64,000 nucleotides of DNA from Macrostomum lignano (GCA_002269645.1 NIVC01001449.1:186001-250000); one strand, 5' to 3'; shown: positions 1 through 52,500, numbered from the stretch's first letter. Numbers and translations are program-made. Notes: generated by a model from the letters alone, not told the origin.

Positions 1-672
1 TTGAACATAAACACCTGTGCGCTTATTTAGAATTGAACATAAACACCTGTGCGCTTATTTAGAATTGAACATAAACACCTGTGCGCTTATTTAGAATTGA
101 ACATAAACACCTGTACGCTTATTCAGAATTGAACATAAACACCTGTACGCTTATTCAGAATTGAACATAAACACCTGTACGCTTATTCAGAATTGAACAT
201 AAACACCTGTACGCTTATTCAGAATTGAACATAAACACCTGTACGCTTATTCAGAATTGAACATAAACACCTGAGCGCTTATTCAGAATTGAACATAAAC
301 ACCTGCACGCTTATTCAGAATTGAACATAAACACCTGTGCGCTTATTCAGAATTGAACATAAACACCTGCACGCTTATTCAGAATTGAACATAAACACCT
401 GTGCGCTTATTCAGAATTGAACATAAACACCTGCACGCTTATTCAGAATTGAACATAAACACCTGCACGCTTATTCAGAATTGAACATAAACACCTGTGC
501 GCTTATTCAGAATTGAACATAAACACCTGTGCGCTTATTCAGAATTGAACATAAACACCTGTGCACTTATTCAGAATTGAACATAAACACCTGCACGCTT
601 ATTCAGAATTGAACACAAAACTGTGCGCTTATTCAGAATTGAACATAAACACCTGTGCGCTTATTCAGAATT
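1..672. repeat. 32-bp tandem minisatellite, about 21 copies, truncated by the window start
   Basis: Unit TTGAACATAAACACCTGTGCGCTTATTCAGAA recurs at 1, 33, 65 and onward, with GTGC/GTAC/GCAC variants; ends near 672. Confidence 0.97.
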
Positions 673-3715: not shown

Positions 3716-4715
3716 TATAATTTTCGTTGTGTAATTTTTGTCGTATGAAGCGCCCCCAGCCCCGTTTTTATTTTATAATTTTTTTTTAAAGGTTTTATTT
3801 TAAATTTTATGGCCTCTTGACACCTGTGCATTGTCACTGACTTTTACGAACTAAGTGCCCATTTCAGTGTGAAAATGAATTTTTTTTGATGAATTTTGAG
3901 TGCAAAATGCTTTGATGACGAGTGCATGAACGTAACAGAATTCACTGTGCATTTAATTTCTCTAAGCAATAAGCAAATTGCAAGCGTTTAAGCTGGCAAG
4001 CATAAAAATCCAGAGACTTTTGAATGTCAAAACTACGTATAAGTAAGCAAAATACCTTTGCAGTTGAAATACAGTCTGGTATAGTCTCATCCTAATTATT
4101 ATTTACGCTGCCCTAGTGGGTTTTTATTCAAGCTAAGTGATTACCTACTAGATTAAATTGTAGGATGCGGCCAAGCTGAAGTGGAATGCTAAACTCTGCT
4201 GGCGGAGAAGTACAAGCGCGTGTTGATTAAATTAAAATGCAGCGTCGGAAACAAAAGCTTCGCGCATGCGAAAGTTCACTTTTTAAACACGCCGGAAGGA
4301 GCCAAACGAGACAAAGTCAGTTGCGAAAAGCAGGCAGCGGCCGAGAAAGCGGATCCCAGTGGATCAAGCGAAGCGTTTATTTATTAGTTTAAATGAGTTA
4401 ATATTTACTGGTTTGTAAAAAGAAGATAAAAAAAATTGAGAAATGGCGGCGGAGCCAAGCCGGGCCGGGTGCAGAGGCTTTAAGCTGGCTGGCGTGGCCA
4501 ACCCCCACACCTCAACCCCCCGCCAAAGTACAGCGATATGTACAGCGGCACCCTCCGGCGCGTCTAACACCCCTTACTCAGAGAGTAACGATTGCATTAA
4601 ACACGCCGGAAGGAGCCAAACGAGACAAAGTCAGTTGCGAAAAGCAGGCAGCGGCCGAGAAAGCGGATCCCAACCCCAATGATGGGGAAGGGAAGGAGTA
4701 AAAGCGGGAAGGCAG

Positions 4716-5713
4716 TCAGGTGGACGCAGCCTGCAGCTGCGAAGCCATGAAAGAAGCAGAGCGCTGGCGGCGCGACAGGGCAGAGCTGGCAGAAAAGTAG
4801 CGGAGAACAGCGTCCGATCTCCAGCCCCCAAGAGCCCGAACGTCTGATTCTGACAAGCCGATTTGATGGCAGAAGCTGGCACCCCCACGCCGGATGCTGT
4901 GGCCGGAGAAACCAGCAGCTGGAAGGCCGCACGCAGCCAGACACGCACGAAGACAGCTGATGAACTGGCTGGCTGAGAGCTCGCCTCCGTGGCCGTAGCC
5001 AAAGAACGGCGCCCTTGGGTCGCTGGCTGGTGACAGGTGCAGGTGAGACAGTAGAGCGCGCACAGGGCAGAGCGGTGACTCTTGAACAGGTGGCAGAAGA
5101 ACGACATGCGGCGTCGACCCGAACTGGTTGGTCTTGGACTTAGGGAGGGTCAACTTCCAGCAGCCAGGTGAAGCCGACAGGCAGGCCCGTGAGACAGAGC
5201 GGCTGCCGCGGGTCGATAGGAAGTCGCCAAGGCGCAACATGCCCCACCAGCCCACCAGAAGAGCCGCCCAGAAGGCGGCCCTGAGATCTGCGCTTGAGAT
5301 GGAGCGCGGGAGCTGCTGATGGATGCTCTTGAGGTGCTCGATGGTCAGCGGCTTCGCCTGTTTGCATCGCAGGCCGAGATGACGTTTGGCGCCGCGAAGG
5401 GCCAGCTGCACGGTGAAGTCTTTCGCTGGGTCGGGGGCGCCGGTGGCTTGGTGCAGAAAAGAGACGGCATGGATGTAGGATCGGAGGCTAGAGAAAGACC
5501 GGAGCCGGGTGCTCACCAGGTGCGCAATGTAGCGGCAGAGCAGGTCACCGTCAGCTGGAGATGAAGGGCGGCCTGCGCTAACACAGAAGGCTTCCCAGGA
5601 GCGCAGCTGGCTGAGGTAGGATCGCCAGGAGTTCTCCGCCAGGCCGAGGCGGCACAGGTGTCTGGCAGACACAGCGCGGCGGGCGGGCGGCGTCTCCGGA
5701 GGGCGAGGGCGAC
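4716..5713 (-). CDS. Ngaro tyrosine recombinase ORF3, predicted to be entered through a splice acceptor at 5714/5713
   Basis: Catalytic set present: MLRLGD (R), KSKTN (K), HSIRRGGA (HxxR), GGWRSDAVLRY (W, Y). First in-frame Met lies next to the catalytic Arg. Confidence 0.9.
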
Positions 5714-7369
5714 CTGCAAAAGGAGGCGAGATTGGGAAGCGGCAGAGAGCGCGTGCGACGCGAACTCAAGCGGGCAGATCACGAGCGTACGGTAGTAGCG
5801 GCAGCAAAAGTTAATGAGCTCAGACTGCGAGGCAAACATGCGAGAGGCGGCATCAGCAAAAATCTGCATGCGACCAGGAAGGTGAAAGGCCTCCAAACTG
5901 ATGCTGTTCCTGGTGCACAGCAGAGCCACAGTCTGGTACACCTGCAGGAACCGCGGGTCACGACAGCTCAGTCGATTGATCATGCCAGCCGCAGCGGTGC
6001 TGTCGGTGTAGATGACAATCTTGCAGTTCTTTAGCTGAGAGCGACGGTGCAGGATGATCAGCAAAGGTGCCAGAGCCTCCTTGAAGTTGATATGAACATC
6101 CTTGAACACACCACCGCAGTCCAGCTCCCAGTCGATGACACTCCAGAAACTCTCGGCACCCCAGATGACTGCGGCTGCGCCCGACCGGCTGCTGTCAGTC
6201 TCCATGGCAAACTCCTCATCAAAGCGCGGCCACAAAGGCACCGGGGGGAGCCAAGCCAGGGCTCTGAGCCACCAGGACAGGTTGGCGCGGGTCTCATCGG
6301 TCACCCAAAGCTTGCAGTCAACAGCAGTTGTCAGCCAGTCGAAGAGCGGACGCAGGAAGACTCTGACATGAGGGACAATCTGACAGAACCAGCCAAGCTT
6401 GCCAATCAGCTTCTGAGCAGAGCGCATGTGCACCCGAGTCTCCGAGCAGGTTTGAGTCAGCAGCTTTGTCGTCTCGAGAGCTTTCTCCTCGGGCAGCGAC
6501 TTGGTGCCGGTAGCGGTGTTGATGCGCACGCCAAGGAAGTCGATGCATTGCGTAGGTCTGACAACCTTGTCCCAGTTGATGACAAAGCCGAGGCGCTGCA
6601 GGATGTCCAGCAGGCAATTGAAAGCAGCGAAAGCCTCGGACTCGGATTTCCCAGCGACTGCCCAGTCATCCAGGTAGTTCACCGTAGCAGAAAAGCCAAG
6701 CCGGTGCATGTGCCGGGTAACGGCGGCTGAAAGACGGTGAAAAACTTCGCAAGCAGCTTTGGCGCCGAAGGGAAGCCTGGTGTCGCAGAGCAGACTGTCC
6801 TGGCTGTCCGAGTCAAACCGCCAGGCGAGGCCGACGAGCCGGTAGTCAGCAGGCCTGATTGGCACGGACCTGTAGGCGCTTTTGAGATCAATTTTGGCCA
6901 TGTAGTGTCCCGGATGGAGATGACGAACCAGCTGCTGGACAGTGCAGTACTTGATGTGCTTCTGTTGGTCGTAGAAGTCGTTGACAGACTGGCCGGTCGG
7001 ATAGGACAGGTCATGGATCAGGCGGACCCGCCCGTCGGACTTGGGAAGGGCACCGATGGGGTTGATTTTGATCGGGCCGCTCCACCGGATGTACCTCCCA
7101 AGGCGCAGCTCCTCCTCGACCTGGGCTTCCACAGCAGAGCGGTGCAGCAGGGCGGAGGCGTGGTTCTTGGACGAAGTCAAAGGTGGCTGGCCAGCATTGG
7201 TGAGAGCGAAACCGTTGACGACGCCTTGCATCAGAAAGTCGCGGTCTGGGTCGTCGCTGAGCAGAGCACTCCAGGCGTCAGGTTGCAGGTCAGACGAGAT
7301 GGGCAGCGAAGAAGTAAAAGCAGAAAAATCGGAATTAAAAGCAGAGCAGTCAGCTGGATAAAATGGCAT
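5513..7369 (-). CDS. Ngaro reverse transcriptase / RNase H ORF2
   Basis: VRLIHDLS, KIDLKSAYR, RLPFG, YLDD, FLGV; RNase H TDSS, HINFKE, YTDS, ADAASR. Open frame from MPFY at 7369. Confidence 0.93.
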   Translation of the reverse strand: MPFYPADCSAFNSDFSAFTSSLPISSDLQPDAWSALLSDDPDRDFLMQGVVNGFALTNAGQPPLTSSKNHASALLHRSAVEAQVEEELRLGRYIRWSGPIKINPIGALPKSDGRVRLIHDLSYPTGQSVNDFYDQQKHIKYCTVQQLVRHLHPGHYMAKIDLKSAYRSVPIRPADYRLVGLAWRFDSDSQDSLLCDTRLPFGAKAACEVFHRLSAAVTRHMHRLGFSATVNYLDDWAVAGKSESEAFAAFNCLLDILQRLGFVINWDKVVRPTQCIDFLGVRINTATGTKSLPEEKALETTKLLTQTCSETRVHMRSAQKLIGKLGWFCQIVPHVRVFLRPLFDWLTTAVDCKLWVTDETRANLSWWLRALAWLPPVPLWPRFDEEFAMETDSSRSGAAAVIWGAESFWSVIDWELDCGGVFKDVHINFKEALAPLLIILHRRSQLKNCKIVIYTDSTAAAGMINRLSCRDPRFLQVYQTVALLCTRNSISLEAFHLPGRMQIFADAASRMFASQSELINFCCRYYRTLVICPLEFASHALSAASQSRLLLQVALALRRRRPPAALCLPDTCAASAWRRTPGDPTSASCAPGKPSVLAQAALHLQLTVTCSAATLRTW

Positions 7370-8484
7370 CAGTTTTTTGCACTTGCACCAGTCACGTGAC
7401 CCGGCAGCTGTCCGGTGAGAAATGACTGCGGCGACTGCGTGTGAGCATGAGCCGGGTGCGCTGCCAGGCAGCCTTGGATTTTGCAGACGTGGCGGAACTT
7501 GCAGTTCTGGCGGTTGCATCCGGACTCGGAGTTGAAGCGCAGACAGATCGGCCTGGTTGCTGCCGGGATTTGCTGCTGGCTGGGCTGCTTAGCGAACGTG
7601 AACCGCAGGTTTCTGGGGGCGTTGAGGTGCTTGTGGTACAACTGAGGGGGCTCCTCACCCCACGCCATGCCCGACTCCGCCACCAGCCTCCGGTAGTCCT
7701 CGTCAAACTCCCAGATTACGGACTCTGGGTAGTCAGCAGCCAGCAGCTCTCCGATCTTGCGATTGTAGTCAAGGTAGCCAAGGACGTCAGTCAGGAGACC
7801 ATCAGTGCTTCCAGCAGCCACCGGGAGTTTTTCCTTGATCAGCTTTTGCAAGATGATCGAGTTGGCCGCGATCCACTGACCAGCAGAGATACTAGACAGC
7901 TTCGGCTCCTGCTTTCTGAATGTGAGCGAGCCATTCTCCATAGTGGCGATCAACTGCTCCTGACTGGCTGAGCCGGATCCTCTGGCTAGCTTGATGTGGT
8001 CTCTGACGAGATGCAACTTGCGAGTCGGAGCCTGGCAATTAGCGGCCTGAAGCTGAGCCGCCTCCCTCATCCCAGATTCAAAAACCTCGGGCAACTGCAG
8101 ACTGGCATGTGCGTTATGCTCACCTGATGATGATGCTGGCTGGGGCTGAGCCGTCAAGCGCTGCTGAGTGTGAAGCTGTTGCTGAAGATCACGACGACGG
8201 CCTTCCAGGACTTGCAGTTCGAGCAGCTCCACCTCCTGCCGCAACGCAGCCAGACGGTCGCTCCCCGCCCCCGGAGGCGCCTCGCCCGCGCTGCCGATGC
8301 CGTCTTCGGCGTCCGGAGCAGAAGTCATCTCGGAGTTGTTGAAGTCTTCGTCAGCTTGCTCTAAACCGAGTGCAGTAGACAAGCGCTTGGCAAGCTGTTG
8401 TTTGCGGCCCGTAGTAGGCAGGCCTCTGTTTCGCAGCTCAGCCTTGAGTTGGCGCACGGTTAGTCGCTTTGGGCTGGCACTCAT
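7369..8484 (-). CDS. Ngaro Gag-like ORF1 with N-terminal SAP domain and C-terminal Cys/His zinc-finger region
   Basis: ATG at 8484 in GCCACCGCCATG context. LTVRQLKAELRNRGLPTTGRKQQLAKRL fits the SAP consensus. C-terminus CLRFNSESGCNRQNCKFRHVCKIQGCLAAH. Confidence 0.85.
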   Translation of the reverse strand: MSASPKRLTVRQLKAELRNRGLPTTGRKQQLAKRLSTALGLEQADEDFNNSEMTSAPDAEDGIGSAGEAPPGAGSDRLAALRQEVELLELQVLEGRRRDLQQQLHTQQRLTAQPQPASSSGEHNAHASLQLPEVFESGMREAAQLQAANCQAPTRKLHLVRDHIKLARGSGSASQEQLIATMENGSLTFRKQEPKLSSISAGQWIAANSIILQKLIKEKLPVAAGSTDGLLTDVLGYLDYNRKIGELLAADYPESVIWEFDEDYRRLVAESGMAWGEEPPQLYHKHLNAPRNLRFTFAKQPSQQQIPAATRPICLRFNSESGCNRQNCKFRHVCKIQGCLAAHPAHAHTQSPQSFLTGQLPGHVTGASAKN

Positions 8485-9630
8485 GGCGGTGGCTGAGCAA
8501 AAAAATTGAGAAATGGCGGCGGAGCCAAGCCGGGCCGGGTGCAGAGGCTTTAAGCTGGCTGGCGTGGCCAACCCCCACACCTCAACCCCCCGCCAAAGTA
8601 CAGCGATATGTACAGCGGCACCCTCCGGCGCGTCTAACACCCCTTACTCAGAGAGTAACGATTGCATTCAAGCAGCTTTGCTCTCAGACGGCAGTAAACA
8701 CACTAAAGTCAGGCATCATAGCGCCCAAGAGACTGATTGGGTAAACTTTTTCTAAAGTGGGTCGGCAGTTGAATAAAAAATCTGTCAAAACAGCGACTCT
8801 GAAACCAAGGTTTCCTCGAAGCTCTGCTTTTCCATGGGGGGCACTTCTGAAACTGAATAGATAGCTAATGACTCGTCAGCTTTTTCATCGCTTTTCAGGC
8901 CTTTATTCAGCAATGTGAATAGCTAAATAGCCACAGGCACATCCCAGATTAAAAGTCCAAGCAAACAAACAATAAATTTTAAGAACCATGTAGCATATTG
9001 TTGAAGTCCCTCTTGACGCTCTGTGACTGAGCACAGTAACAGATAAATTCTGAAATGAAAATATGCATCTGAGCCTGTGCTTTGCCTGCATTGGACACGA
9101 ATGAGGATCAAGAAAGTCCTGGAATGCAAGGAAGCACACTTCATATCCTTATGTCTGTTTTTGCGTAGAAGCTTGTGGGTTACTAAATCCCAGAACGAGA
9201 ACGAAATAAAGGTAAAAAGTGAACGGACAAGCGTATTGCGAGAAAGAAAAGAAACGATACGGTTTGGCTTTCCAGCACAGATCATTGTCGGCAGAAAAAG
9301 CAAAGAAACTATGTTCTACTATCCAATAGATACTTTTGAATTCAAAGGCATCTGGTTTTTTGGCAGTCAAAAGGTTCCTCTTATGATTCTCGAGGCGTGG
9401 GCTTCAATGTTTACAGAGCGTCATCTAAGCAGCTGAATGCTTTGATATGCATTATATTCCTGAATTTATTCTATCAGAGCGTAACTCTAACAGTGAGCTG
9501 GAGTCTTATTTTTGCAAGCTTGATCGAAAGAGACCCATAGCTACTCGACGGAGCAGATCAGCGGCAAACGTTCTTGCCCATGATCGCCAAGCTCCAAAGT
9601 ACACAGAGTTTGCATGCCTCATGATTAGAA

Positions 9631-17940: not shown

Positions 17941-20900
17941 TGACGGAGGTGACGGAAGGGACAAGGTGACGCAGATGACGGAGGTGACGGAGGTGACGCA
18001 GCTGACGGAGGTGACGGAGGTGACGGAGGTGACGGAGCTGACGGAGGTGACGGAGGTGACGGAGCTGACGGAGGTGACGCAGATGACGGAGGTGACGGAG
18101 GTGACGCAGCTGACGGAGGTGACGGAGGTGACGGAGGTGACGGAGCTGACGGAGGTGACGGAGGTGACGGAGGTGACGCAGAAGACGGAGGTGACGCAGA
18201 TGACGGAGGTGACGCAGATGACGGAGGTGACGGAGGTGACGCAGCTGACGGAGGTGACGGAGGTGACGGAGGTGACGGAGCTGACGGAGGTGACGGAGGT
18301 GACGGAGGTGACGCAGATGACGGAGGTGACGGAGGTGACGCAGCTGACGGAGGTGACGGAGGTGACGGAGGTGACGGAGCTGACGGAGGTGACGGAGGTG
18401 ACGGAGCTGACGGAGGTGACGCAGATGACGGAGGTGACGGAGGTGACGCAGCTGACGGAGGTGACGGAGGTGACGGAGGTGACGGAGCTGACGGAGGTGA
18501 CGCAGATGACGGAGGTGACGCAGATGACGGAGGTGACGGAGGTGACGCAGCTGACGGAGGTGACGGAGGTGACGGAGGTGACGGAGCTGACGGAGGTGAC
18601 GGAGGTGACGGAGGTGACGCAGATGACGGAGGTGACGGAGGTGACGCAGCTGACGGAGGTGACGGAGGTGACGGAGGTGACGGAGCTGACGGAGGTGACG
18701 GAGGTGACGGAGCTGACGGAGGTGACGCAGATGACGGAGGTGACGGAGGTGACGCAGCTGACGGAGGTGACGGAGGTGACGGAGGTGACGGAGCTGACGG
18801 AGGTGACGGAGGTGACGGAGGTGACGCAGAAGACGGAGGTGACGCAGATGACGGAGGTGACGCAGATGACGGAGCTGACGGAGGTGACGCAGCTGACGGA
18901 GGTGACGGAGCTGACGGAGGTGACGGAGGTGACGGAGCTGACGGAGGTGACGCAGATGACGGAGGTGACGGAGGTGACGCAGCTGACGGAGGTGACGGAG
19001 GTGACGGAGGTGACGGAGCTGACGGAGGTGACGGAGGTGACGGAGGTGACGCAGAAGACGGAGGTGACGCAGATGACGGAGGTGACGCAGATGACGGAGG
19101 TGACGCAGATGACGGAGGTGACGCAGATGACGGAGGTGACGCAGATGACGGAGGTGACGGAGGTGACGGAGGTGACGCAGATGACGGAGGTGACGCAGAT
19201 GACGGAGGTGACGCAGATGACGGAGGTGACGGAGGTGACGGAGGTGACGCAGATGACGGAGGTGACGGAGGTGACGGAGCTGACGGAGGTGACGCAGATG
19301 ACGGAGGTGACGGAGGTGACGGAGCTGACTGAGGTGACGGAGGTGACGGAGGTGACGGAGGTGACGGAGCTGACGGAGGTGACGGAGGTGACGGAGGTGA
19401 CGGAGCTGACGAAGGTGACGGAGGTGACGGAGGTGACGGAGCTGACGGAGGTGACGGAGGTGACGGAGGTGACGCAGATGACGGAGGTGACGCAGATGAC
19501 GGAGGTGACGCAGATGACGGAGGTGACGCAGATGACGGAGGTGACGCAGATGACGGAGGTGACGGAGGTGACGGAGGTGACGCAGATGACGGAGGTGACG
19601 GAGGTGACGGAGCTGACGGAGGTGACGCAGATGACGGAGGTGACGGAGGTGACGGAGCTGACGGAGGTGACGGAGGTGACGGAGGTGACGGAGGTGACGG
19701 AGCTGACGGAGGTGACGGAGGTGACGGAGGTGACGGAGCTGACGGAGGTGACGGAGGTGACGGAGGTGACGGAGCTGACGGAGGTGACGGAGGTGACGCA
19801 GATGACGGAGGTGACGCAGATGACGGAGGTGACGCAGATGACGGAGGTGACGGAGGTGACGGAGGTGACGCAGATGACGGAGGTGACGGAGGTGACGGAG
19901 CTGACGGAGGTGACGCAGATGACGGAGGTGACGGAGGTGACGGAGCTGACGGAGGTGACGGAGGTGACGGAGGTGACGGAGGTGACGGAGCTGACGGAGG
20001 TGACGGAGGTGACGGAGGTGACGGAGGTGACGGAGGTGACGGAGGTGACGGAGGTGACGGAGCTGACGGAGGTGACGGAGGTGACGGAGCTGACGGAGGT
20101 GACGCAGATGACGGAGGTGACGGAGGTGACGGAGGTGACGCAGATGACGGAGGTGACGGAGGTGACGCAGATGACGGAGGTGACGGAGGTGACGGAGCTG
20201 ACGGAGGTGACGCAGATGACGGAGGTGACGGAGGTGACGGAGCTGACGGAGGTGACGGAGGTGACGGAGGTGACGGAGCTGACGGAGGTGACGGAGGTGA
20301 CGGAGGTGACGGAGCTGACGGAGGTGACGGAGGTGACGGAGGTGACGGAGCTGACGGAGGTGACGGAGGTGACGGAGCTGACGGAGGTGACGCAGATGAC
20401 GGAGGTGACGGAGGTGACGGAGCTGACGGAGGTGACGGAGGTGACGGAGGTGACGGAGCTGACGGAGGTGACGGAGGTGACGGAGCTGACGGAGGTGACG
20501 CAGCTGACGGAGGTGACGGAGGTGACGGAGGTGACGGAGCTGACGGAGGTGACGGAGGTGACGGAGGTGACGGAGCTGACGGAGGTGACGGAGGTGACGG
20601 AGGTGACGGAGCTGACGGAGGTGACGGAGGTGACGGAGCTGACGGAGGTGACGGAGGTGACGGAGCTGACGGAGCTGACGGAGGTGACGGAGCTGACGCA
20701 GATGACGGAGGTGACGGAGGTGACGGAGGTGACGGAGGTGACGGAGGTGACGGAGGTGACGGAGGTGACGGAGGTGACGGAGGTGACGGAGCTGACGGAG
20801 CTGACGGAGGTGACGGAGCTGACGGAGGTGACGGAGCTGACGGAGCTGACGGAGGTGACGCAGATGACGGAGGTGACGGAGGTGACGGAGCTGACGGAGG

Positions 20901-23900
20901 TGACGGAGGTGACGGAGGTGACGGAGCTGACGGAGGTGACGGAGGTGACGGAGGTGACGGAGCTGACGGAGGTGACGGAGGTGACGGAGGTGACGGAGGT
21001 GACGGAGGTGACGCAGATGACGGAGGTGACGCAGATGACGGAGGTGACGGAGGTGACGGAGCTGACGGAGGTGACGGAGCTGACGGAGGTGACGGAGGTG
21101 ACGGAGGTGACGGAGGTGACGGAGGTGACGCAGATGACGGAGGTGACGCAGATGACGGAGGTGACGGAGGTGACGGAGCTGACGGAGGTGACGGAGGTGA
21201 CGGAGGTGACGGAGCTGACGGAGGTGACGGAGGTGACGGAGCTGACGGAGGTGACGCAGCTGACGGAGGTGACGGAGGTGACGGAGGTGACGGAGCTGAC
21301 GGAGGTGACGGAGGTGACGGAGGTGACGGAGCTGACGGAGGTGACGGAGGTGACGGAGGTGACGGAGCTGACGGAGGTGACGGAGGTGACGGAGCTGACG
21401 GAGGTGACGGAGGTGACGGAGCTGACGGAGCTGACGGAGGTGACGGAGCTGACGCAGATGACGGAGGTGACGGAGGTGACGGAGGTGACGGAGGTGACGG
21501 AGGTGACGGAGGTGACGGAGGTGACGGAGGTGACGGAGGTGACGGAGCTGACGGAGCTGACGGAGGTGACGGAGCTGACGGAGGTGACGGAGCTGACGGA
21601 GGTGACGGAGGTGACGGAGGTGACGGAGGTGACGCAGATGACGGAGGTGACGCAGATGACGGAGGTGACGGAGGTGACGGAGCTGACGGAGGTGACGCAG
21701 ATGACGGAGGTGACGGAGGTGACGGAGCTGACGGAGGTGACGGAGGTGACGGAGGTGACGGAGCTGACGGAGGTGACGGAGGTGACGGAGCTGACGGAGG
21801 TGACGGAGGTGACGGAGGTGACGGAGGTGACGGAGGTGACGGAGCTGACGGAGCTGACGGAGCTGACGGAGGTGACGCAGATGACGGAGGTGACGGAGGT
21901 GACGGAGGTGACGGAGGTGACGGAGGTGACGGAGGTGACGGAGCTGACGGAGGTGACGGAGGTGACGGAGCTGACGGAGGTGACGGAGCTGACGGAGGTG
22001 ACGGAGGTGACGGAGGTGACGCAGATGACGGAGGTGACGCAGATGACGGAGGTGACGGAGGTGACGGAGCTGACGGAGGTGACGCAGATGACGGAGGTGA
22101 CGGAGGTGACGGAGCTGACGGAGGTGACGGAGGTGACGGAGGTGACGGAGCTGACGGAGGTGACGGAGGTGACGGAGGTGACGGAGGTGACGGAGGTGAC
22201 GCAGATGACGGAGGTGACGCAGATGACGGAGGTGACGGAGGTGACGGAGCTGACGGAGGTGACGCAGATGACGGAGGTGACGGAGGTGACGGAGCTGACG
22301 GAGGTGACGGAGGTGACGGAGGTGACGGAGCTGACGGAGGTGACGGAGGTGACGGAGCTTACGGAGGTGACGGAGCTGACGGAGGTGACGGAGGTGACGG
22401 AGGTGACGGAGCTGACGGAGGTGACGGAAGTGACGGAGGTGACGGAGCTGACGGAGGTGACGGAGGTGACGGAGGTGACGGAGCTGGCGGAGGTGACGGA
22501 GGTGACGGAGCTGACGGAGGTGACGGAGGTGACGGAGCTGACGGAGCTGACGGAGGTGACGGAGCTGACGCAGATGACGGAGGTGACGGAGCTGACGGAG
22601 GTGACGGAGGTGACGGAGCTGACGGAGGTGACGGAGCTGACGGAGGTGACGGAGGTGACGGAGGTGACGGAGCTGACGGAGGTGACGGAGGTGACGGAGG
22701 TGACGGAGCTGACGGAGGTGACGGAGGTGACGGAGGTGACGGAGCTGACGCAGATGACGGAGGTGACGGAGCTGACGGAGGTGACGGAGGTGACGGAGCT
22801 GACGGAGGTGACGGAGCTGACGGAGGTGACGGAGGTGACGGAGGTGACGGAGCTGACGGAGGTGACGGAGGTGACGGAGGTGACGGAGCTGACGGAGGTG
22901 ACGGAGGTGACGGAGGTGACGGAGCTGACGGAGGTGACGGAGGTGACGGAGCTGACGGAGGTGACGGAGGTGACGGAGCTGACGGAGCTGACGGAGGTGA
23001 CGGAGCTGACGCAGATGACGGAGGTGACGGAGGTGACGGAGGTGACGGAGGTGACGGAGGTGACGGAGGTGACGGAGTTGACGGAGGTGACGGAGGTGAC
23101 GGAGCTGACGGAGCTGACGGAGGTGACGGAGCTGACGGAGGTGACGGAGCTGACGGAGGTGACGGAGGTGACGCAGATGACGGAGGTGACGGAGGTGACG
23201 GAGCTGACGGAGGTGACGGAGGTGACGGAGGTGACGGAGCTGACGGAGGTGACGGAGGTGACGGAGGTGACGGAGCTGACGGAGGTGACGCAGATGACGG
23301 AGGTGACGCAGATGACGGAGGTGACGGAGGTGACGGAGCTGACGGAGCTGACGGAGGTGACGGAGGTGACGGAGGTGACGGAGCTGACGGAGGTGACGGA
23401 GCTGACGGAGGTGACGGAGGTGACGGAGCTGACGGAGGTGACGGAGGTGACGGAGCTGACGGAGGTGACGGAGGTGACGGAGCTGACGGAGGTGACGCAG
23501 ATGACGGAGGTGACGGAGGTGACGCAGCTGACGGAGGTGACGGAGGTGACGGAGGTGACGGAGCTGACGGAGGTGACGGAGGTGACGGAGGTGACGCAGA
23601 AGACGGAGGTGACGCAGATGACGGAGGTGACGCAGATGACGGAGCTGACGGAGGTGACGGAGGTGACGGAGGTGACGGAGGTGACGGAGGTGACGGAGCT
23701 GACGGAGGTGACGGAGCTGACGGAGGTGACGGAGCTGACGGAGGTGACGGAGGTGACGCAGATGACGGAGGTGACGGAGGTGACGGAGCTGACGGAGGTG
23801 ACGGAGGTGACGCAGATGACGGAGGTGACGGAGGTGACGGAGCTGACGCAGATGACGGAGGTGACGCAGATGACGGAGGTGACGCAGATGACGGAGGTGA

Positions 23901-26900
23901 CGGAGCTGACGGAGGTGACGGAGGTGACGGAGGTGACGGAGGTGACGGAGGTGACGGAGCTGACGGAGGTGACGGAAGTGACGGAGGTGACGGAGCTGAC
24001 GGAGGTGACGGAGGTGACGGAGGTGACGGAGCTGACGGAGGTGACGGAGGTGACGGAGCTGACGGAGGTGACGGAGGTGACGGAGCTGACGGAGCTGACG
24101 GAGGTGACGGAGGTGACGCAGATGACGGAGGTGACGGAGGTGACGGAGGTGACGGAGGTGACGGAGGTGACGGAGGTGACGGAGGTGACGGAGGTGACGG
24201 AGGTGACGGAGCTGACGGAGCTGACGGAGGTGACGGAGCTGACGGAGGTGACGGAGGTGACGGAGGTGACGGAAGGGACAAGGTGACGCAGATGACGGAG
24301 GTGACGCAGATGACGGAGGTGACGGAGGTGACGGAGCTGACGGAGGTGACGGAGGTGACGGAGCTGACGGAGCTGACGGAGGTGACGGAGCTGACGGAGG
24401 TGACGGAGCTGACGGAGGTGACGGAGGTGACGGAGGTGACGGAGGTGACGGAGCTGACGGAGGTGACGGAGGTGACGGAGCTGACGGAGGTGACGGAGCT
24501 GACGGAGGTGACGGAGGTGACGGAGGTGACGCAGATGACGGAGGTGACGCAGATGACGGAGGTGACGGAGCTGACGGAGCTGACGGAGGTGACGCAGATG
24601 ACGGAGGTGACGCAGATGACGGAGGTGACGGAGGTGACGGAGCTGACGGAGGTGACGGAGGTGACGGAGCTGACGGAGGTGACGCAGATGACGGAGGTGA
24701 CGGAGGTGACGCAGCTGACGGAGGTGACGGAGGTGACGGAGGTGACGGAGCTGACGGAGGTGACGCAGATGACGGAGGTGACGCAGATGACGGAGGTGAC
24801 GGAGGTGACGGAGCTGACGGAGGTGACGGAGGTGACGGAGGTGACGGAGCTGACGGAGGTGACGGAGGTGACGGAGGTGACGCAGATGACGGAGGTGACG
24901 GAGGTGACGCAGCTGACGGAGGTGACGGAGGTGACGGAGGTGACGGAGCTGACGGAGGTGACGGAGGTGACGGAGCTGACGGAGGTGACGCAGATGACGG
25001 AGGTGACGGAGGTGACGCAGCTGACGGAGGTGACGGAGGTGACGGAGGTGACGGAGCTGACGGAGGTGACGGAGGTGACGGAGGTGACGCAGAAGACGGA
25101 GGTGACGCAGATGACGGAGGTGACGCAGATGACGGAGCTGACGGAGGTGACGGAGGTGACGGAGGTGACGGAGGTGACGGAGGTGACGGAGCTGACGGAG
25201 GTGACGGAGCTGACGGAGGTGACGGAGCTGACGGAGGTGACGGAGGTGACGCAGATGACGGAGGTGACGGAGGTGACGGAGCTGACGGAGGTGACGGAGG
25301 TGACGCAGATGACGGAGGTGACGGAGGTGACGGAGCTGACGGAGGTGACGCAGATGACGGAGGTGACGCAGATGACGGAGGTGACGCAGATGACGGAGGT
25401 GACGGAGGTGACGGAGGTGACGCAGATGACGGAGGTGACGCAGATGACGGAGGTGACGCAGATGACGGAGGTGACGGAGGTGACGGAGGTGACGCAGATG
25501 ACGGAGGTGACGGAGGTGACGGAGCTGACGGAGGTGACGCAGATGACGGAGGTGACGGAGGTGACGGAGCTGACTGAGGTGACGGAGGTGACGGAGGTGA
25601 CGGAGGTGACGGAGCTGACGGAGGTGACGGAGGTGACGGAGGTGACGGAGCTGACGGAGGTGACGGAGGTGACGGAGGTGACGGAGCTGACGGAGGTGAC
25701 GCAGATGACGGAGGTGACGCAGATGACGGAGGTGACGCAGATGACGGAGGTGACGGAGGTGACGGAGGTGACGCAGATGACGGAGGTGACGGAGGTGACG
25801 GAGCTGACGGAGGTGACGCAGATGACGGAGGTGACGGAGGTGACGGAGCTGACGAAGGTGACGGAGGTGACGGAGGTGACGGAGCTGACGGAGGTGACGG
25901 AGGTGACGGAGGTGACGCAGATGACGGAGGTGACGCAGATGACGGAGGTGACGCAGATGACGGAGGTGACGCAGATGACGGAGGTGACGCAGATGACGGA
26001 GGTGACGGAGGTGACGGAGGTGACGCAGATGACGGAGGTGACGGAGGTGACGGAGCTGACGGAGGTGACGCAGATGACGGAGGTGACGGAGGTGACGGAG
26101 CTGACGGAGGTGACGGAGGTGACGGAGGTGACGGAGGTGACGGAGCTGACGGAGGTGACGGAGGTGACGGAGGTGACGGAGCTGACGGAGGTGACGGAGG
26201 TGACGGAGGTGACGGAGCTGACGGAGGTGACGGAGGTGACGCAGATGACGGAGGTGACGCAGATGACGGAGGTGACGCAGATGACGGAGGTGACGGAGGT
26301 GACGGAGGTGACGCAGATGACGGAGGTGACGGAGGTGACGGAGCTGACGGAGGTGACGCAGATGACGGAGGTGACGGAGGTGACGGAGCTGACGGAGGTG
26401 ACGGAGGTGACGGAGGTGACGGAGGTGACGGAGCTGACGGAGGTGACGGAGGTGACGGAGGTGACGGAGCTGACGGAGGTGACGGAGGTGACGGAGCTTA
26501 CGGAGGTGACGGAGCTGACGGAGGTGACGGAGGTGACGGAGGTGACGGAGCTGACGGAGGTGACGGAAGTGACGGAGGTGACGGAGGTGACGGAGGTGAC
26601 GGAGCTGACGGAGGTGACGCAGATGACGGAGGTGACGGAGGTGACGGAGCTGACGGAGGTGACGGAGGTGACGGAGGTGACGGAGCTGACGGAGGTGACG
26701 GAGGTGACGGAGGTGACGGAGCTGACGGAGGTGACGGAGGTGACGGAGGTGACGGAGCTGACGGAGGTGACGGAGGTGACGGAGCTGACGGAGGTGACGC
26801 AGATGACGGAGGTGACGGAGGTGACGGAGCTGACGGAGGTGACGGAGGTGACGGAGGTGACGGAGCTGACGGAGGTGACGGAGGTGACGGAGCTGACGGA

Positions 26901-32900: not shown

Positions 32901-33039
32901 AGCTGACGGAGGTGACGGAGGTGACGGAGGTGACGGAGGTGACGGAGCTGACGGAGGTGACGGAGGTGACGGAGCTGACGGAGGTGACGGAGCTGACGGA
33001 GGTGACGGAGGTGACGGAGCTGACGGAGGTGACGGAGAT
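17941..33039. repeat. 15.1-kb tandem array of 9-bp units (about 1680) with higher-order duplications
   Basis: Units GACGGAGGT, GACGGAGCT, GACGCAGAT, GACGCAGCT, GACGCAGAA. A 17-bp spacer GACGGAAGGGACAAGGT occurs at 17951, 24268, 29622 and 30809. Confidence 0.99.
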
Positions 33040-33562
33040 GAAATCTATAAAATAAATCTATAAAATCAATAACCTATGAGAGTAGAGCTCAATAATTAGG
33101 AGGTGATTGCTTGGTTGCTTAGAAGTCCTATAAAGATTCGAAAGTTGTAGAGCGCAATAATAAATGTAGAAGTATATGATCTGCATCGGTTAATCACTCA
33201 CTTGGCTCAGGCTAAACCCGTGAGACGGTCAGGAATATCCGAAAAGATATATTGATGTCGGGTCTGCTCCTGGTTTGACAGCTGTCAAACCAGCTGTGAC
33301 CACTAGCTGTATGTGAACTTTTAATTATTTCTGCACGACAGTATGAAATTTCTTTCAATAGTAACTTCCTTTGGTGCTTAACATATGACTTTCACGGACC
33401 TAAAGTCCGGTACGACAGTTAAGCTAGTATTGATTACATATGTAAAAATTAATTTTACTATCGCAATAAACACCAAACTTTCAAAACACCACAGCATTTC
33501 ACTAAGTACGCTACTTAAAGTAGAAATTGAGCCTCCAAATTTGTCGGCAATCTGCTCATCCT

Positions 33563-34118
<556 letters not shown>

Positions 34119-49544: not shown

Positions 49545-52500
49545 TATTAAATAATGATACTTTTGACGCGGCTGGGCTTCACTGTGAACTGGGCGAAAAG
49601 TCAGGCACCAACTCAGCGCATGACTTTCCTGGGTGTCGAGTTCGATACGGTGGCTGGCATCAAGAGGTTGCCCGAGGAGAAGGCGTGGAACCTGGCTGAG
49701 CTGTTAGCAACTGAAAGGAGCAAAACAAAGATCAGCAAGCGGGCCTTGCAACGCTTGATCGGCAACCTTGGCTGGGCGGCGCAGGTGATTTGCAAAGGGA
49801 AAACTAATTGCGTGATCTGATCGAAGTGTGCAACGCTTTGCGACCTGACGAGATGATTAAAGTCAGCCTACAGTTATCCGACAATAATCCATCAATTCAG
49901 CTGATGGATTGTGGCGCTGGAGTCTGCCCGGTGGGTGGAGCTCTGGCCCGTCTTCAAGAATCATGTTGCAATCGAGTCTGATGCGTGTGGAAGAGGCGGG
50001 GCAGCGGTGCTTCGAAGGTCGGATCGCAGTTGGACTGGTGCTACGTCAGTTGGAGCCAAGACGCGGCCGGAGTGTTCGCTGATCTGCAAAGAGGCGGTGG
50101 CTCCTCTGCTGTCAATCCAGCGCTGGAGGGAAGAGCTGGAAGGCTGTAATGTTAGCGTTTATTGTGACAACATGGCGGCGTGCCATATTATCAACAATGG
50201 CACTTCGAGGTGTCCCCTCGTGCAGAGATTACTGCAGACGATTGCGCTGATGTCATTACGGTATAGTCTGAGAGTTCGAGCCTTTCATGTGCCGGGAGAG
50301 TTTCAAATTCTCGCCGATGCAGCGTCTCGGTTGCACGAGCGCAGTCAGTTGATTATTTTTTTTCGTTGCTATGGCAACTTGTGCCCGTTTGCTTTGCAAT
50401 CAATGCACCGACATGCTTTCTGCTCTGCCCATTTTCTTCATTTTCAGCCCGTCCAGCTTCGCCATGCAGACTCTCTCAGCCGCCAGGCCGCGTCGCTGCT
50501 AGGCGTCTCCATGCACCACGGTCGAGACAGGCGGTGGCAAGGCACATCCGTGAGTGGCAAGCTTACTGCAAGCAGACCAGCTGCAGTCCTGTATCCTGTC
50601 CGCTGAACAGACTGCGCGAATACCTGCCCAGCCTAGTCGGGACGCGTTTGCGTGCGTACGGCAGCGTTGCTTCTGTCGCCAGCTCGCTGTCCGTATGGTT
50701 TCGCTTCAACTCTGCACCAGATCTGACAAAGCATGCCGCCACCACTCTCCTCCTGCGAGGTGCCAAGCGAGAGCTGAGATGTCGGGTGTCGAGAAAACGA
50801 CAATTATCGCCGCTCATGTTGCGGGAGATTCAACAGCGAGTCAGTCGTTCTGACGGTTTTCTGCTTGCATGCTGGGCAGTCACTATCTGCTGTTGGTGGG
50901 GCATGCTTAGAAAATCTAGTGTGCTGCCAACTTCAGGAAAAGGTCCGACACGTGTGCGCTGCGCTGACGTCTTTCGACATCCGCTGGGTCTTATCTTGGC
51001 GCCTGGACCAAGGGAAGACTATCCAGTTTAAAAAGCGAGTGCACCAGGTGCTTTTTCCAAGGCTAGTGACGCGGAGCCTGACTAGAGTTGGCGATCGAGC
51101 AGCACGCACGATTCAATAATCTGCATTTGGCGGATGTGCTGTGAATGTGCATGCTCAATGCTATTATGCAATGTACGCGCACTGATGTACATCTATGAGT
51201 ATCAGTCAGATTAATTTCATTCATTTGGCCAGCGGCCACAACACTGGCATCGCAAACAGGGACTTAGCGAAAACCCACCCCGGGCAAACTTCAAATTCAA
51301 AATTCAACTCACGGCAGCCAAGGCCCACAAGCCCAACTCTCGCTATCGCATTGCAATTCTGCAAACTCAGCACAACGAAGTTAGAAATGAGCAGCTCTGA
51401 CAACGCCACAGCGCCAGCGCTACGACTAAACCTCAGAGAACAGCCTCCATTTCTCGACAACCCAGGAACACCTGTGGGCCGCTGAGTTCGATAACTACCT
51501 GCTAGCGTCAGGAGTCGACGGCTTGCAAGAAGCCAGGAAGATCGCACTACTCGTGCACTGCCTCGGGCGGGAAGGAGTGCGAGTCTACCGGACTCTCATC
51601 AAGTCTCCAGATGAAGCTCCAGCGACACTCGAAGCGGCATGCAAACTGCTCAAGGAGCACTTTCAGCCCACCGTCAGCGTGTATGCCAAGCGCCATGACT
51701 TCCAGAAGTGCGTCCAGCGGAGCGGCGAAGGCGTGCACGCATTCGTGGCAAACTGGCGCCATGCCGCCAGAGAATGCGAGTTCCAGAGCCTTCACGACCG
51801 ACCTCATCCTGGACCAGCTGATCTTCGGCACTTCATCAGCGAAGGTGCGCGAACGCCTCCTGCTAGAGCAAGAGCTCACCCTGGACGGAGCAATCCAGAT
51901 TGCCGCCCAGGTGGAAAAGGCTGTCCAGAGTGAGAAGTCCTTGACCGGCAAGAATGCAGCTGACGACGGCATCAGGAAGATCAACGCCAAGAGAGCTCCG
52001 ATCGGCACCAGAGGCCAGGCAGTGCGACCATCGCAGGAGCCCTGCTGCTCACACTGCGGTAAGCCGGACCACCGCGCAGGCAGCGACCCGCGCTGCGCTG
52101 CCCGTGGCAAAGCGTGTAAGAAGTGCGGGAAGCTCAACCACTTTGCCAGCGTGTGCAAGAGCAGCACCACGGCACCGCACTCGGCTCAGAATAATGTTCA
52201 AGGCGTCGACTTCGACAGCTCCACTCAGCAAAGCATCATCGCCGTCAGCACGGACAAGAAGGGTGAGTACAAGAAAGAGAGCCAGCGTCAGGATTAACGG
52301 GTTTAGAACTCCGCTGTTGGTGGACACAGCTGCCAAAGTCTCCATGATCAACATGCAGACCTGCCATAAGCTTTTCGGCTCGAAGGTCCCCCTGCGACCG
52401 TCTGGGAGACAGCTCGTGTCGTACAACGGCTCCAGCATCAGCGTCGCCGGTGAGGTCGACGCCACGGTCGAGTTCGACCGCGTCCAGCTCCAGTCGTTCA

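What the first reader, a model, noticed from the sequence alone, without database searches (positions are those of the whole stretch)
4716..8484. Predicted spliced SAP-recombinase fusion in the intact Ngaro element
Seen: the YR frame has no AUG before the catalytic Arg. A polypyrimidine acceptor CTCGCCTCCTTTTGCAG|G lies at 5714/5713 (minus), and a consensus donor CAG|GTGAGC lies in gag at 8124/8123. Both are phase 1. Removing the 2410-nt intron joins the first 120 Gag codons (SAP domain plus linker) in frame to the whole YR, giving 452 aa (..ASSS-G-RPRPPETP..). Known: SAP is a DNA/chromatin-binding motif, and how YR ORFs of these elements are translated is poorly defined. Inference: the integrase is a chimeric SAP-YR that could be tethered to particular DNA. 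I do not know of this being described for Ngaro, but cannot check the literature here.
Basis: partly seen in the sequence, partly recalled or inferred. Interest (0 to 1): 0.85.

Follow-up and report, generated by a model that had tools for sequence, protein, structure and literature searches.

The report
Spliced Gag-leader recombinase in Ngaro retrotransposon
An intact Ngaro retrotransposon of the flatworm Macrostomum lignano most likely makes its integration enzyme from a spliced mRNA that fuses the first 120 residues of Gag (a SAP DNA-binding domain plus a long helix) to the tyrosine recombinase, and the same gene structure is annotated in Ngaro elements of molluscs and a hemichordate, which would settle how this recombinase is translated.

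Summary
On the minus strand, donor CAG|GTGAGC (8124/8123) and acceptor TTTTGCAG|G (5714/5713) are both phase 1. Removing the 2410-nt intron gives a 452-aa SAP–recombinase open frame. In a rough scoring matrix they are the best donor and best acceptor of the whole 4.4-kb element. None of 2000 shuffles gave an equivalent in-frame pair.

The host is Macrostomum lignano. A UniProt gene model starts exactly at the acceptor. Another model, from a sister family (about 40% identical), reads SAP, helix, "SSQ-G-RSR" and recombinase without a break.

Four NCBI gene models of distant Ngaro families (Patella vulgata, Glandiceps talaboti, two in Argopecten irradians) have the same structure: a 5' gag exon, a 2.2–3.3-kb intron holding the rest of gag plus RT/RNase H, then a recombinase exon. 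All are phase 1.

Rivals fit less well. There is no slippery heptamer in the RT/recombinase overlap, and the AUG of the M. lignano spliced leader would be out of frame.

I saw no junction read or cDNA, and the SAP tethering role is inference. The papers I could search do not describe this. I rate it a new variant of a known kind, interest about 0.7.

The parts
4283..8671 (-). Whole Ngaro element (4389 bp) with split direct repeats A1 ... B1-A2-(spacer)-B2
   Evidence: Self-BLAST: A1 8671..8499 matches A2 4601..4429 (172/173 identical). B1 4672..4597 matches B2 4358..4283 (76/76 identical).
8499..8671 (-). A1 repeat (5' end, outside the intron)
8124..8484 (-). Exon 1 coding part: Gag codons 1-120 plus 1 nt (phase 1)
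8374..8469 (-). SAP domain (residues 6-37)
   Evidence: Pfam PF02037, E=3.7e-12, 46 bits against a cut-off of 23.9. PDB 1zrj SAP domain, E=0.0013. AF2 model shows helices 10-19 and 27-38.
8152..8268 (-). Long helix, possibly a coiled coil (residues 73-111), shared by Gag and the fusion protein
   Evidence: AF2 helix 73-111, pLDDT 64-87. A sister family keeps LAALRKEVEELE... at this place.
8118..8126 (-). 5' splice site CAG|GTGAGC (cut between 8124 and 8123). The G|GT lies in Gag codon Gly121.
   Evidence: Rank 1 of 199 GT. Matches the M. lignano cis-donor motif GT[G/A]AG (PMC8629364).
5714..8123 (-). Intron of 2410 nt: the rest of gag (to 7369) plus the RT/RNase H frame
7369..8484 (-). Full gag ORF (371 aa) read from unspliced RNA. 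The C-terminal part has a Cys/His knuckle, CLRFNSESGCNRQNCKFRHVC.
7372..7378 (-). A AAA AAC heptamer in the gag 0-frame, directly before the gag stop. RT/RNase H is in the -1 frame.
   Evidence: The same heptamer is present in the Patella element.
5513..7368 (-). RT/RNase H ORF (from the ATG that overlaps the gag TGA)
   Evidence: Pfam RVT_1, E=5e-12; RT_RNaseH weak
5714..5730 (-). 3' splice site: pyrimidine tract plus CAG (CTCGCCTCCTTTTGCAG|G)
   Evidence: Rank 1 of 246 AG.
4716..5713 (-). Exon 2 coding part: the whole Cre-like tyrosine recombinase (residues 121-452, then the stop). Catalytic R281 is at 5234..5232, H392/R395 lie in GHSIRRG, W418, and Y426 is at 4799..4797.
   Evidence: phmmer match to Cre, E=1e-10, with Cre residue 39 aligned to residue 141. 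Invariant or near-invariant R281, K314, H392, R395, W418, Y426 in 46 sequences. AF2 pLDDT above 90.
4283..4672 (-). 3' repeats: B1 (4672..4597), A2 (4601..4429), a 70-nt AT-rich spacer with AATAAA (4428..4359), and B2 (4358..4283). All lie outside the intron.
50430..50448 (+). Equivalent acceptor CCCATTTTCTTCATTTTCAG|CC in a second, decayed, 5'-truncated Ngaro-like copy (about 49551-56067). It is again phase 1 in the recombinase frame.

Best explanation
The element is an intact, recently inserted Ngaro-type tyrosine-recombinase retrotransposon of Macrostomum lignano. I propose three proteins from one primary transcript.

1. Unspliced RNA gives Gag. This RNA is also the template for reverse transcription.
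2. The same RNA probably gives Gag-RT/RNase H by -1 ribosomal frameshifting at A AAA AAC, just before the gag stop.
3. A fraction of the RNA is cis-spliced from the donor in Gag codon 121 (8124) to the acceptor that sits where the recombinase frame opens (5713). This removes the rest of gag and all of RT/RNase H. The spliced mRNA uses the gag AUG and encodes a 452-aa protein: SAP domain, acidic linker, long helix, disordered junction, then a complete Cre-like recombinase.

Sharing the Gag N-terminus would let the recombinase travel with Gag and the cDNA, as a Gag-Pol fusion does for retroviral enzymes. In the M. lignano families it would also give the enzyme a SAP DNA/chromatin-binding module.

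What is shown: the sites, the frame, the domains, and the same exon structure in other phyla. What is inferred: that splicing happens in vivo in this copy, the frameshift, and the roles of the shared leader.
For: - Geometry and frame check out.
- The donor and acceptor are each the top-scoring site of the element. No equivalent in-frame pair occurred in 2000 shuffles.
- The sites fit the published M. lignano cis motifs GT[G/A]AG and CAG (PMC8629364).
- The recombinase frame opens 18 codons before the acceptor. Its first AUG (M279) lies after the core-binding domain.
- UniProt A0A1I8JHY2 (100% identical) begins at RPRPPETP, the first whole codon after the acceptor.
- A0A1I8J2F9, from a sister family, aligns colinearly to residues 15-359 across the junction..AVSSQ-G-RSRAP...
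- Four NCBI models have the same two coding exons:
  - Patella vulgata XP_050388701.2: exon 1 373 nt, intron 2248 nt.
  - Glandiceps talaboti XP_077986280.1: exon 1 514 nt, intron 3291 nt.
  - Argopecten irradians XP_069104712.1: exon 1 214 nt, intron 2283 nt.
  - Argopecten irradians XP_069129437.1: exon 1 385 nt, intron 2268 nt.
- In all four the first coding exon is the 5' part of gag, and the intron holds RT/RNase H together with the remainder of the gag ORF (read directly in all four; confirmed by tblastn in two). All four are GT-AG and phase 1.
- Both Argopecten genes also carry a gag-only product from the same 5' end.
- A decayed second copy in the window keeps a strong phase-1 acceptor at the same place.
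- No X XXY YYZ heptamer exists in the RT/recombinase overlap in M. lignano, Patella or Argopecten.
- The junction falls in a disordered linker between the long helix and the recombinase fold.
Against: - I saw no RNA-seq junction read, cDNA or peptide for this or any copy.
- The gene models are automatic predictions, and I could not see their RNA support.
- The Logan contigs of the Argopecten element that I could fetch are all unspliced.
- The annotated sites in the other species are not top-ranked by my rough matrix (donor ranks 3-7, acceptor ranks 1-15).
- Some models (M. lignano A0A1I8G0Z6 and a frog model) use a donor inside RT rather than in gag.
- The Argopecten recombinase frame has its own AUG, so splicing may not be obligatory everywhere.
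- The leader exon is not conserved in sequence or domain between phyla. The Patella leader could not be modelled.
Confidence: 0.78

Rival explanations
1. The recombinase is made by translational recoding: a second -1 frameshift from the RT/RNase H frame into the overlapping recombinase frame gives a Gag-RT-RH-YR polyprotein. The splice-like sites would then be irrelevant.
For: The recombinase frame is -1 relative to RT/RNase H and overlaps it by about 250 nt (5765..5513). Papers on these elements describe the YR ORF as overlapping or frameshifted (PMC3783388; PMC9210276). The element does carry a good -1 site, A AAA AAC, at the gag/RT junction.
Against: There is no X XXY YYZ heptamer in the RT 0-frame anywhere in the overlap in M. 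lignano, Patella or Argopecten. In Patella the overlap is only 45 nt, and the recombinase frame opens 4 nt before the annotated acceptor. This idea does not explain why the best donor and best acceptor sit in compatible phase, or why other phyla share the exon structure.
Confidence: 0.07
2. The acceptor at 5713 is a spliced-leader trans-splice site. A monocistronic SL-recombinase mRNA is made without the Gag leader.
For: M. lignano trans-splices 20-30% of its genes. The acceptor TTGCAG fits the published trans-acceptor motif [T/C]TNCAG (PMC8629364). The UniProt model A0A1I8JHY2 starts exactly at the acceptor with no upstream exon, as a trimmed SL transcript would.
Against: The 35-nt SL ends in AUG. 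Joined to 5713, that AUG reads the RT-tail frame (a 67-aa ORF ending at 5513), not the recombinase frame. In the recombinase frame the SL supplies no AUG (my reading). Trans-splicing is expected where no upstream cis donor exists, whereas here the best donor lies upstream (PMC8629364). The sister-family model carries the Gag leader fused in frame. The mollusc and hemichordate models are cis-spliced.
Confidence: 0.08
3. The sites are fortuitous or only weakly used. The recombinase starts at a non-AUG codon or an internal entry site on unspliced RNA, or this copy does not express it. The public gene models are ab initio artefacts that chain the open frames of a repeat.
For: All exon structures come from automatic pipelines. 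Two models choose other donors. There is a GTG at 5672 in the recombinase frame. I retrieved no spliced contig.
Against: The shuffle test gave 0 of 2000. Four models in three species agree on gag 5' exon, recombinase exon and phase 1, which has a chance of about (1/3)^4 for the phase alone. The recombinase frame lacks an AUG before its core-binding domain in M. lignano, in Patella and in the metagenome contig L001. Frames are kept although intron lengths differ modulo 3.
Confidence: 0.07

Closest known systems
Ngaro group of tyrosine-recombinase retrotransposons (DIRS order; Goodwin and Poulter 2004, cited from my own knowledge and via PMC6681497 and PMC4157794)
   Same: Gag-like ORF1 with a Cys/His knuckle, an RT/RNase H ORF, a Cre-like recombinase ORF, no methyltransferase, and split direct repeats A1 ... 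B1-A2-B2.
   Different: Published descriptions that I could read treat the three ORFs as separate, overlapping or frameshifted, and do not mention an intron or a Gag-recombinase fusion. A SAP domain at the Gag N-terminus is not mentioned for Ngaro in any paper I could search. This copy has a 70-nt spacer between A2 and B2.
Retroviral subgenomic mRNAs that keep the gag AUG, such as avian leukosis virus env, where the first gag codons are spliced onto env (my own knowledge)
   Same: One primary transcript serves as both genome and mRNA. A donor lies just inside gag, an acceptor lies in front of a downstream gene, and the downstream protein starts at the gag AUG.
   Different: Here 120 codons holding folded modules are carried over, not a few codons. 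The downstream gene is the integration enzyme, not an envelope protein.
Foamy virus Pol expressed from its own spliced mRNA (topic reviewed in PMC7828637, listed but not read) and Gag-Pol fusions of other retroviruses
   Same: An enzyme of the element is expressed from a spliced mRNA rather than by recoding. Functionally, a Gag-derived N-terminus on an enzyme is what Gag-Pol uses for co-assembly.
   Different: Foamy virus Pol carries no Gag part. In Ngaro only the recombinase, not RT, would be made this way.
Spliced transcripts of LTR retrotransposons: Arabidopsis Ty1/copia subgenomic gag RNA (PMC5580714, listed but not read) and the plant Ogre intron (my own knowledge)
   Same: Host spliceosomal splicing sets the ratio of element proteins, while the unspliced RNA stays the replication template.
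   Different: Those splices produce Gag alone or restore a pol frame. None fuses a Gag N-terminal module to the integrase.
Integrase-borne targeting modules, such as the chromodomain of Ty3/gypsy integrases (my own knowledge) and ORF1-dependent target choice of Cafeteria Ngaros (PMC8547959)
   Same: A chromatin or DNA-binding module physically linked to the integration enzyme could bias target choice. In Cafeteria, loss of ORF1 goes with a changed insertion preference.
   Different: The module here is SAP. It is supplied by splicing from gag, and its effect on targeting is untested.

Membership tests
Ngaro (YR retrotransposon) | Reverse transcriptase plus RNase H ORF | tested here: met
   Pfam RVT_1, E=5e-12, 46 bits against a cut-off of 29.6; RT_RNaseH weak. 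28-33% identity to the RT of Patella, Argopecten and Glandiceps Ngaros.
Ngaro (YR retrotransposon) | Tyrosine recombinase with catalytic R..K..H-x-x-R..H/W..Y | tested here: met
   phmmer match to Cre, E=1e-10. R281 is invariant; K314, H392, R395, W418 and Y426 are at least 90% conserved in 46 sequences.
Ngaro (YR retrotransposon) | Split direct repeats A1 ... B1-A2-B2 | tested here: met
   A1/A2 173 nt with 1 mismatch; B1/B2 76 nt identical. A 70-nt spacer lies between A2 and B2.
Ngaro (YR retrotransposon) | No methyltransferase domain (separates Ngaro from DIRS1 and PAT) | tested here: met
   Only RT and RNase H families hit the 668-aa ORF in Pfam. There is no room for a further domain between RNase H and the recombinase.
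SAP domain | Match to the SAP profile above the curated threshold; helix-extended-helix fold | tested here: met
   PF02037, 46 bits against 23.9. PDB 1zrj SAP domain, E=0.0013. AF2 helices 10-19 and 27-38, but pLDDT only about 58-66.
SAP domain | Binds DNA or chromatin | not testable with these tools
   Function of the family is taken from the literature.
U2-type spliceosomal intron | GT-AG ends with consensus donor and pyrimidine tract / CAG acceptor | tested here: met
   CAG|GTGAGC and CTCGCCTCCTTTTGCAG|G are the top-ranked sites. They fit the M. lignano motifs.
U2-type spliceosomal intron | Recognisable branch point upstream of the acceptor | tested here: inconclusive
   By eye there is no clear YNYURAY within 40 nt upstream (..CTGCCGCTTCCCAATCTCGCC..). 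Branch sites are degenerate in animals.
U2-type spliceosomal intron | Junction present in RNA | not testable with these tools
   I had no access to M. lignano reads. Indirect support comes from the UniProt models and the NCBI isoforms in other species.
Conserved Ngaro gag-to-recombinase intron (proposed here) | Donor in the 5' part of gag, acceptor at the opening of the recombinase frame, same phase across families | tested here: met
   Five of five families are phase 1: M. lignano, Patella, Glandiceps, Argopecten x2. The acceptor lies 4-130 nt after the frame opens.
-1 programmed ribosomal frameshift (gag to RT/RNase H) | X XXY YYZ heptamer in the 0-frame within the overlap | tested here: met
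   A AAA AAC at 7378..7372. The same heptamer is present in Patella L002 at 9002.
-1 programmed ribosomal frameshift (gag to RT/RNase H) | Stimulatory downstream RNA structure | tested here: not met
   The 116 nt from the site fold no better than shuffles (z = +1.96). Pseudoknots were not searched.

The most novel reading that the evidence does not exclude
A single ancient phase-1 intron is a shared feature of animal Ngaro retrotransposons, and perhaps of Ngaros more widely. Through it the recombinase is always made as a fusion to the N-terminal module of Gag. This would be a splicing-based counterpart of Gag-Pol that loads the integration enzyme onto the Gag/cDNA complex. The lineage-specific leader (SAP plus a long helix in flatworms, basic or coiled-coil leaders elsewhere) would set nuclear import and insertion-site choice. 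It would also explain why loss of ORF1 changes target preference in Cafeteria Ngaros.
Probability: 0.5. Interest if true: 0.8.

Novelty: new variant of a known kind. Interest (0 to 1): 0.7.

Why it matters
How tyrosine-recombinase retrotransposons translate their recombinase has been left as "overlapping or frameshifted ORFs". A conserved splice that fuses a Gag N-terminal module to the enzyme gives a concrete mechanism that can be tested directly.

It has four practical consequences.

- It changes how these elements should be annotated. Recombinase ORFs "without a start codon" are not necessarily defective.
- It predicts intron-less gag-5'/recombinase retrocopies.
- It offers a physical link between ORF1 and target-site choice.
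- It explains chimeric host gene models such as the M. lignano "methionine synthase" entry.

The SAP-recombinase architecture may also interest people who engineer targeted recombinases.

Tried and rejected
- **Protein word-index search.** It timed out three times. Twice it returned nothing even for sequences known to be in the collection, so I could not look for junction-spanning proteins from transcript assemblies.
- **Exact look-up.** Gag is not on record.
- **Logan contigs of the Argopecten element (L005-L009).** All are unspliced or 5'-truncated, so they give no direct junction evidence.
- **Shared-leader idea.** I considered that the same donor also feeds an acceptor at 7353 to make a SAP-RT fusion, since it is in frame. 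I set it aside because no model in another species supports it, and a conserved A AAA AAC frameshift site explains RT better.
- **Spliced-leader AUG.** I considered it as the recombinase start and rejected it on frame.
- **Second frameshift into the recombinase.** No heptamer is present.
- **AF2 model of the Patella fusion.** I ran it to ask whether its leader is SAP-like. The leader has pLDDT below 50, so no conclusion is possible.
- **Pfam on the other leader exons.** Nothing significant.
- **Other copies in the window.** There is no second copy of the same family. There is only a decayed, 5'-truncated relative without gag.
- **Literature.** Goodwin and Poulter 2004 and Wasik et al. 2015 could not be opened.


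Full report
**1. What is at the locus**

The minus strand from 8671 to 4283 carries one complete retrotransposon of 4389 bp. A self-comparison shows the split direct repeats typical of Ngaro elements:
- A1 (8671..8499) matches A2 (4601..4429), 172 of 173 bases identical.
- B1 (4672..4597) matches B2 (4358..4283), 76 of 76 identical.
- A 70-nt AT-rich spacer with an AATAAA lies between A2 and B2.

The near-identity of the repeats points to a recent insertion. Three long frames follow one another:
- Gag: 8484..7369, 371 aa.
- RT/RNase H: in the -1 frame, with an ATG overlapping the gag TGA, ending at 5513.
- Recombinase: a further -1 frame, open from 5765 to the stop at 4716.

Pfam finds a SAP domain at Gag residues 6-37 (46 bits, cut-off 23.9) and RVT_1 in the second frame. 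The third frame matches Cre recombinase (E=1e-10). It keeps R281, K314, H392, R395, W418 and Y426 (numbering of the fusion protein). Pfam detects no methyltransferase. The element therefore meets every Ngaro criterion I could test.

**2. The observation**

- CAG|GTGAGC is cut after 8124.
- CTCGCCTCCTTTTGCAG|G is cut before 5713.
- Exon 1 is 361 nt from the gag ATG (phase 1), and the intron is 2410 nt.
- The joined frame runs without a stop for 452 codons and reads ..QPQPASSS-G-RPRPPETP..

The recombinase frame opens only 18 codons before the acceptor. Its first AUG is M279, two codons before the catalytic Arg and after the whole core-binding domain.

I scored every GT and AG of the sense strand with a simple position weight matrix, using approximate human frequencies that I entered by hand. 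The donor is first of 199 and the acceptor first of 246. In 2000 dinucleotide-preserving shuffles of the element, none had a donor of that quality in gag together with an in-frame acceptor of that quality in the 113-nt lead of the recombinase frame. At lower thresholds (8/8), 1.4% did. The pattern is not a chance one.

**3. Whose genome, and what its annotation says**

A full HMMER search with the predicted fusion protein and a look-up of the sources identify the host as the flatworm Macrostomum lignano. Four UniProt entries from that genome bear on the question.
- A0A1I8JHY2 is 100% identical to the recombinase. It begins with RPRPPETP, the first complete codon after the acceptor, so the pipeline placed an exon boundary at 5714/5713. 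The model then runs on into methionine synthase, which is not in this window. It is a chimeric model.
- A0A1I8J2F9 is a fragment from a sister family, 40-43% identical. It aligns in one colinear block to residues 15-359 of the fusion: SAP, acidic linker, helix..AVSSQ-G-RSRAP.., recombinase. This is the predicted architecture in a second family.
- A0A1I8IKY0 comes from a decayed copy. It also places the end of the Gag leader next to the start of the recombinase.
- A0A1I8G0Z6, from a third SAP-Gag family, enters the recombinase at the equivalent point (G|RLPATP..) but from a donor inside RT.

I do not know which of these models rest on transcripts.

**4. The same structure in other phyla**

Among the best 150 hits, the recombinases with long N-terminal extensions are mostly database gene models, several of them from NCBI. 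I fetched the loci that could be fetched and solved the exon structures exactly, requiring the translation of exon 1 plus exon 2 to equal the deposited protein.

| Species and model | Locus | First coding exon | Donor | Intron | Acceptor |
|---|---|---|---|---|---|
| Patella vulgata XP_050388701.2 | L002 | 373 nt | GCAA\|GTATGT | 2248 nt | TTTCTAAACAG\|A |
| Glandiceps talaboti XP_077986280.1 | L003 | 514 nt | CAG\|GTAATG | 3291 nt | TATTGCAG\|G |
| Argopecten irradians XP_069104712.1 | L004 | 214 nt | CAG\|GTATGG | 2283 nt | CGTTTGCAG\|T |
| Argopecten irradians XP_069129437.1 | L010 | 385 nt | TAG\|GTGTGT | 2268 nt | CGTTTACAG\|G |

In every case:
- The first coding exon is the 5' part of the gag ORF.
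- The intron holds RT/RNase H (tblastn in all four) and the rest of the gag ORF. I read the gag ORF through the donor in all four; tblastn with the M. lignano Gag confirms it in Patella and in Argopecten L004.
- The second exon is the whole recombinase.
- The acceptor lies 4 to 130 nt after the recombinase frame opens.

All four are phase 1, like M. lignano. The chance of that for the phase alone is about (1/3)^4. The frame is kept even though the recombinase is in the gag frame in two elements and +1 to it in the other two, with intron lengths of 0 or 1 modulo 3 to match. In four of the five families the donor sits in a Gly codon, G|GT.

Both Argopecten genes also carry a gag-only product from the same 5' end. 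From what I know of NCBI's pipeline, extra isoforms are issued only with transcript support. I could not verify that here.

Two further cases are suggestive only:
- The decayed Ngaro-like copy on the plus strand of the window keeps CCCATTTTCTTCATTTTCAG|CC in phase 1 at the start of its recombinase homology.
- A metagenome contig (L001) has a recombinase frame with no ATG that opens 7 nt before a phase-1 TTGCAG|G. Three phase-1 GTRAGC donors lie in its gag.

**5. How it most likely works**

Unspliced RNA encodes Gag. It probably also encodes Gag-RT/RNase H by -1 frameshifting:
- An A AAA AAC heptamer sits in the gag 0-frame directly before the gag stop (7378..7372).
- The same heptamer sits in the gag/RT overlap of the Patella element.
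- I found no stable structure downstream of it, so this part is inference.

A spliced mRNA then gives the recombinase from the gag AUG. The AlphaFold model of the fusion (46-sequence alignment, mean pLDDT 83) shows these parts in order:

| Residues | Feature |
|---|---|
| 10-19 and 27-38 | Two SAP helices, modest confidence |
| 45-71 | Disordered acidic stretch |
| 73-111 | One long helix |
| 112-136 | Disordered linker containing the junction at residue 121 |
| About 137 to the C-terminus | Confident Cre-like fold |

Cre residue 39 aligns to residue 141, so exon 2 is a complete recombinase and exon 1 is an add-on.

I propose that the leader has two roles. It makes the enzyme associate with Gag and the cDNA, as the Gag part of Gag-Pol does. 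In M. lignano it also adds a SAP DNA/chromatin-binding module. Both roles are inferred. They agree with the report that Cafeteria Ngaros lacking ORF1 insert in different places (PMC8547959).

Because A1 and B1-A2-B2 lie outside the intron, the spliced RNA keeps both ends of the element. It could occasionally be copied into intron-less gag-5'/recombinase elements. That is a testable prediction.

**6. Rivals**

- **A second frameshift from RT/RNase H into the recombinase.** This is what the literature implies. No slippery heptamer exists in the overlap in three elements, and the Patella overlap is only 45 nt.
- **Spliced-leader trans-splicing at 5713.** This is plausible for M. lignano, and the acceptor fits the trans-acceptor motif. 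However, the leader's terminal AUG would read the RT tail frame (67 codons), not the recombinase frame, and it supplies no AUG in the right frame. A strong cis donor upstream also argues against it. It may still occur alongside cis-splicing and could explain the model that starts at the acceptor.
- **Chance sites with non-AUG or internal initiation.** This cannot be excluded without RNA or protein data. It does not explain the shuffle result or the conservation.

**7. Comparison with what is known, and novelty**

The element is an ordinary member of the Ngaro group. The expression strategy is the new part.

Splicing that keeps the gag AUG is known from retroviral env mRNAs. Foamy viruses express Pol from a spliced mRNA. 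Copia-type and Ogre elements are also spliced. I found nothing on a spliced Gag-leader-recombinase fusion in tyrosine-recombinase retrotransposons, and nothing on SAP in their Gag.

Two cautions apply. The original Ngaro papers and the 2015 review were not available to me. The spliced models already sit, uncommented, in RefSeq and UniProt. I therefore rate this as a new variant of a known kind.

**8. Limits**

- There is no direct RNA or protein evidence.
- The splice-site matrix is rough and human-based.
- The gene models are automatic.
- The leader exon is not conserved between phyla.
- The Patella leader could not be modelled.
- The Argopecten recombinase frame has its own AUG, so the splice may not be the only route everywhere.

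Noticed in passing
window 7372-7378 (-); L002 9002-9008: The classical -1 frameshift heptamer A AAA AAC sits in the gag 0-frame directly before the gag stop, with RT/RNase H in the -1 frame. The same heptamer lies in the gag/RT overlap of the Patella Ngaro. No stable downstream structure was predicted.
   Followed up: partly
window 7353-7366 (-): Acceptor-like CCATTTTATCCAG|C lies just after the RT start codon. Joined to the 8124 donor it is also in frame and would give a SAP-RT fusion. No gene model in another species supports this.
   Followed up: partly
window 8492-8506 and 8581 (-): The second-best acceptor of the element (TTTTTTTGCTCAG|C) lies 8 nt before the gag ATG, at the end of repeat A1. 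A donor-like GAG|GTGTGG lies inside A1. This may be a small 5'-UTR intron or a trans-splice site.
   Followed up: no
window 5513-5520 (-): The second-best donor of the element, CTG|GTGAGC, overlaps the RT/RNase H stop codon TGA inside the recombinase coding region.
   Followed up: no
window 4359-4428 (-): A 70-nt AT-rich spacer with AATAAA sits between repeats A2 and B2, which are usually drawn as adjacent in Ngaro elements.
   Followed up: no
window 17941-33041: A 15.1-kb tandem array of the 9-nt unit TGACGGAGG (about 1680 copies, 92% matches).
   Followed up: no
window 1-672; 33562-34119; 40704-43535; 43695-44271: Further tandem arrays: a 32-nt unit x21 at the window edge, (TCTG)n, a 23-nt unit x123, and an 18/61-nt array.
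   Followed up: no
window 49551-56067 (+); 45872-46570 (+): A decayed, 5'-truncated Ngaro-like copy of another family (RT/RNase H 49551-50429, recombinase pieces to 56067, 34-41% aa identity), and a separate weak RT-like stretch.
   Followed up: partly
window 4725-5711 (-), UniProt A0A1I8JHY2: The M. lignano entry named 'methionine synthase' is a chimeric gene model. Its first 329 residues are this Ngaro recombinase, and the host gene part lies outside the window.
   Followed up: partly
L001 6521-6536 and 3737/3878/4154: On an 8.5-kb metagenome contig with a Ngaro element, the recombinase frame has no ATG. It opens 7 nt before a phase-1 TTGCAG|G acceptor, and three phase-1 GTRAGC donors lie in its gag.
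   Followed up: partly
L006/L007 3658-4236; L004 about 7584-8180: The Argopecten Ngaro carries a fourth ORF with a weak GDSL/SGNH-hydrolase hit, as reported for some Ngaros. The M. lignano element has no such ORF.
   Followed up: no
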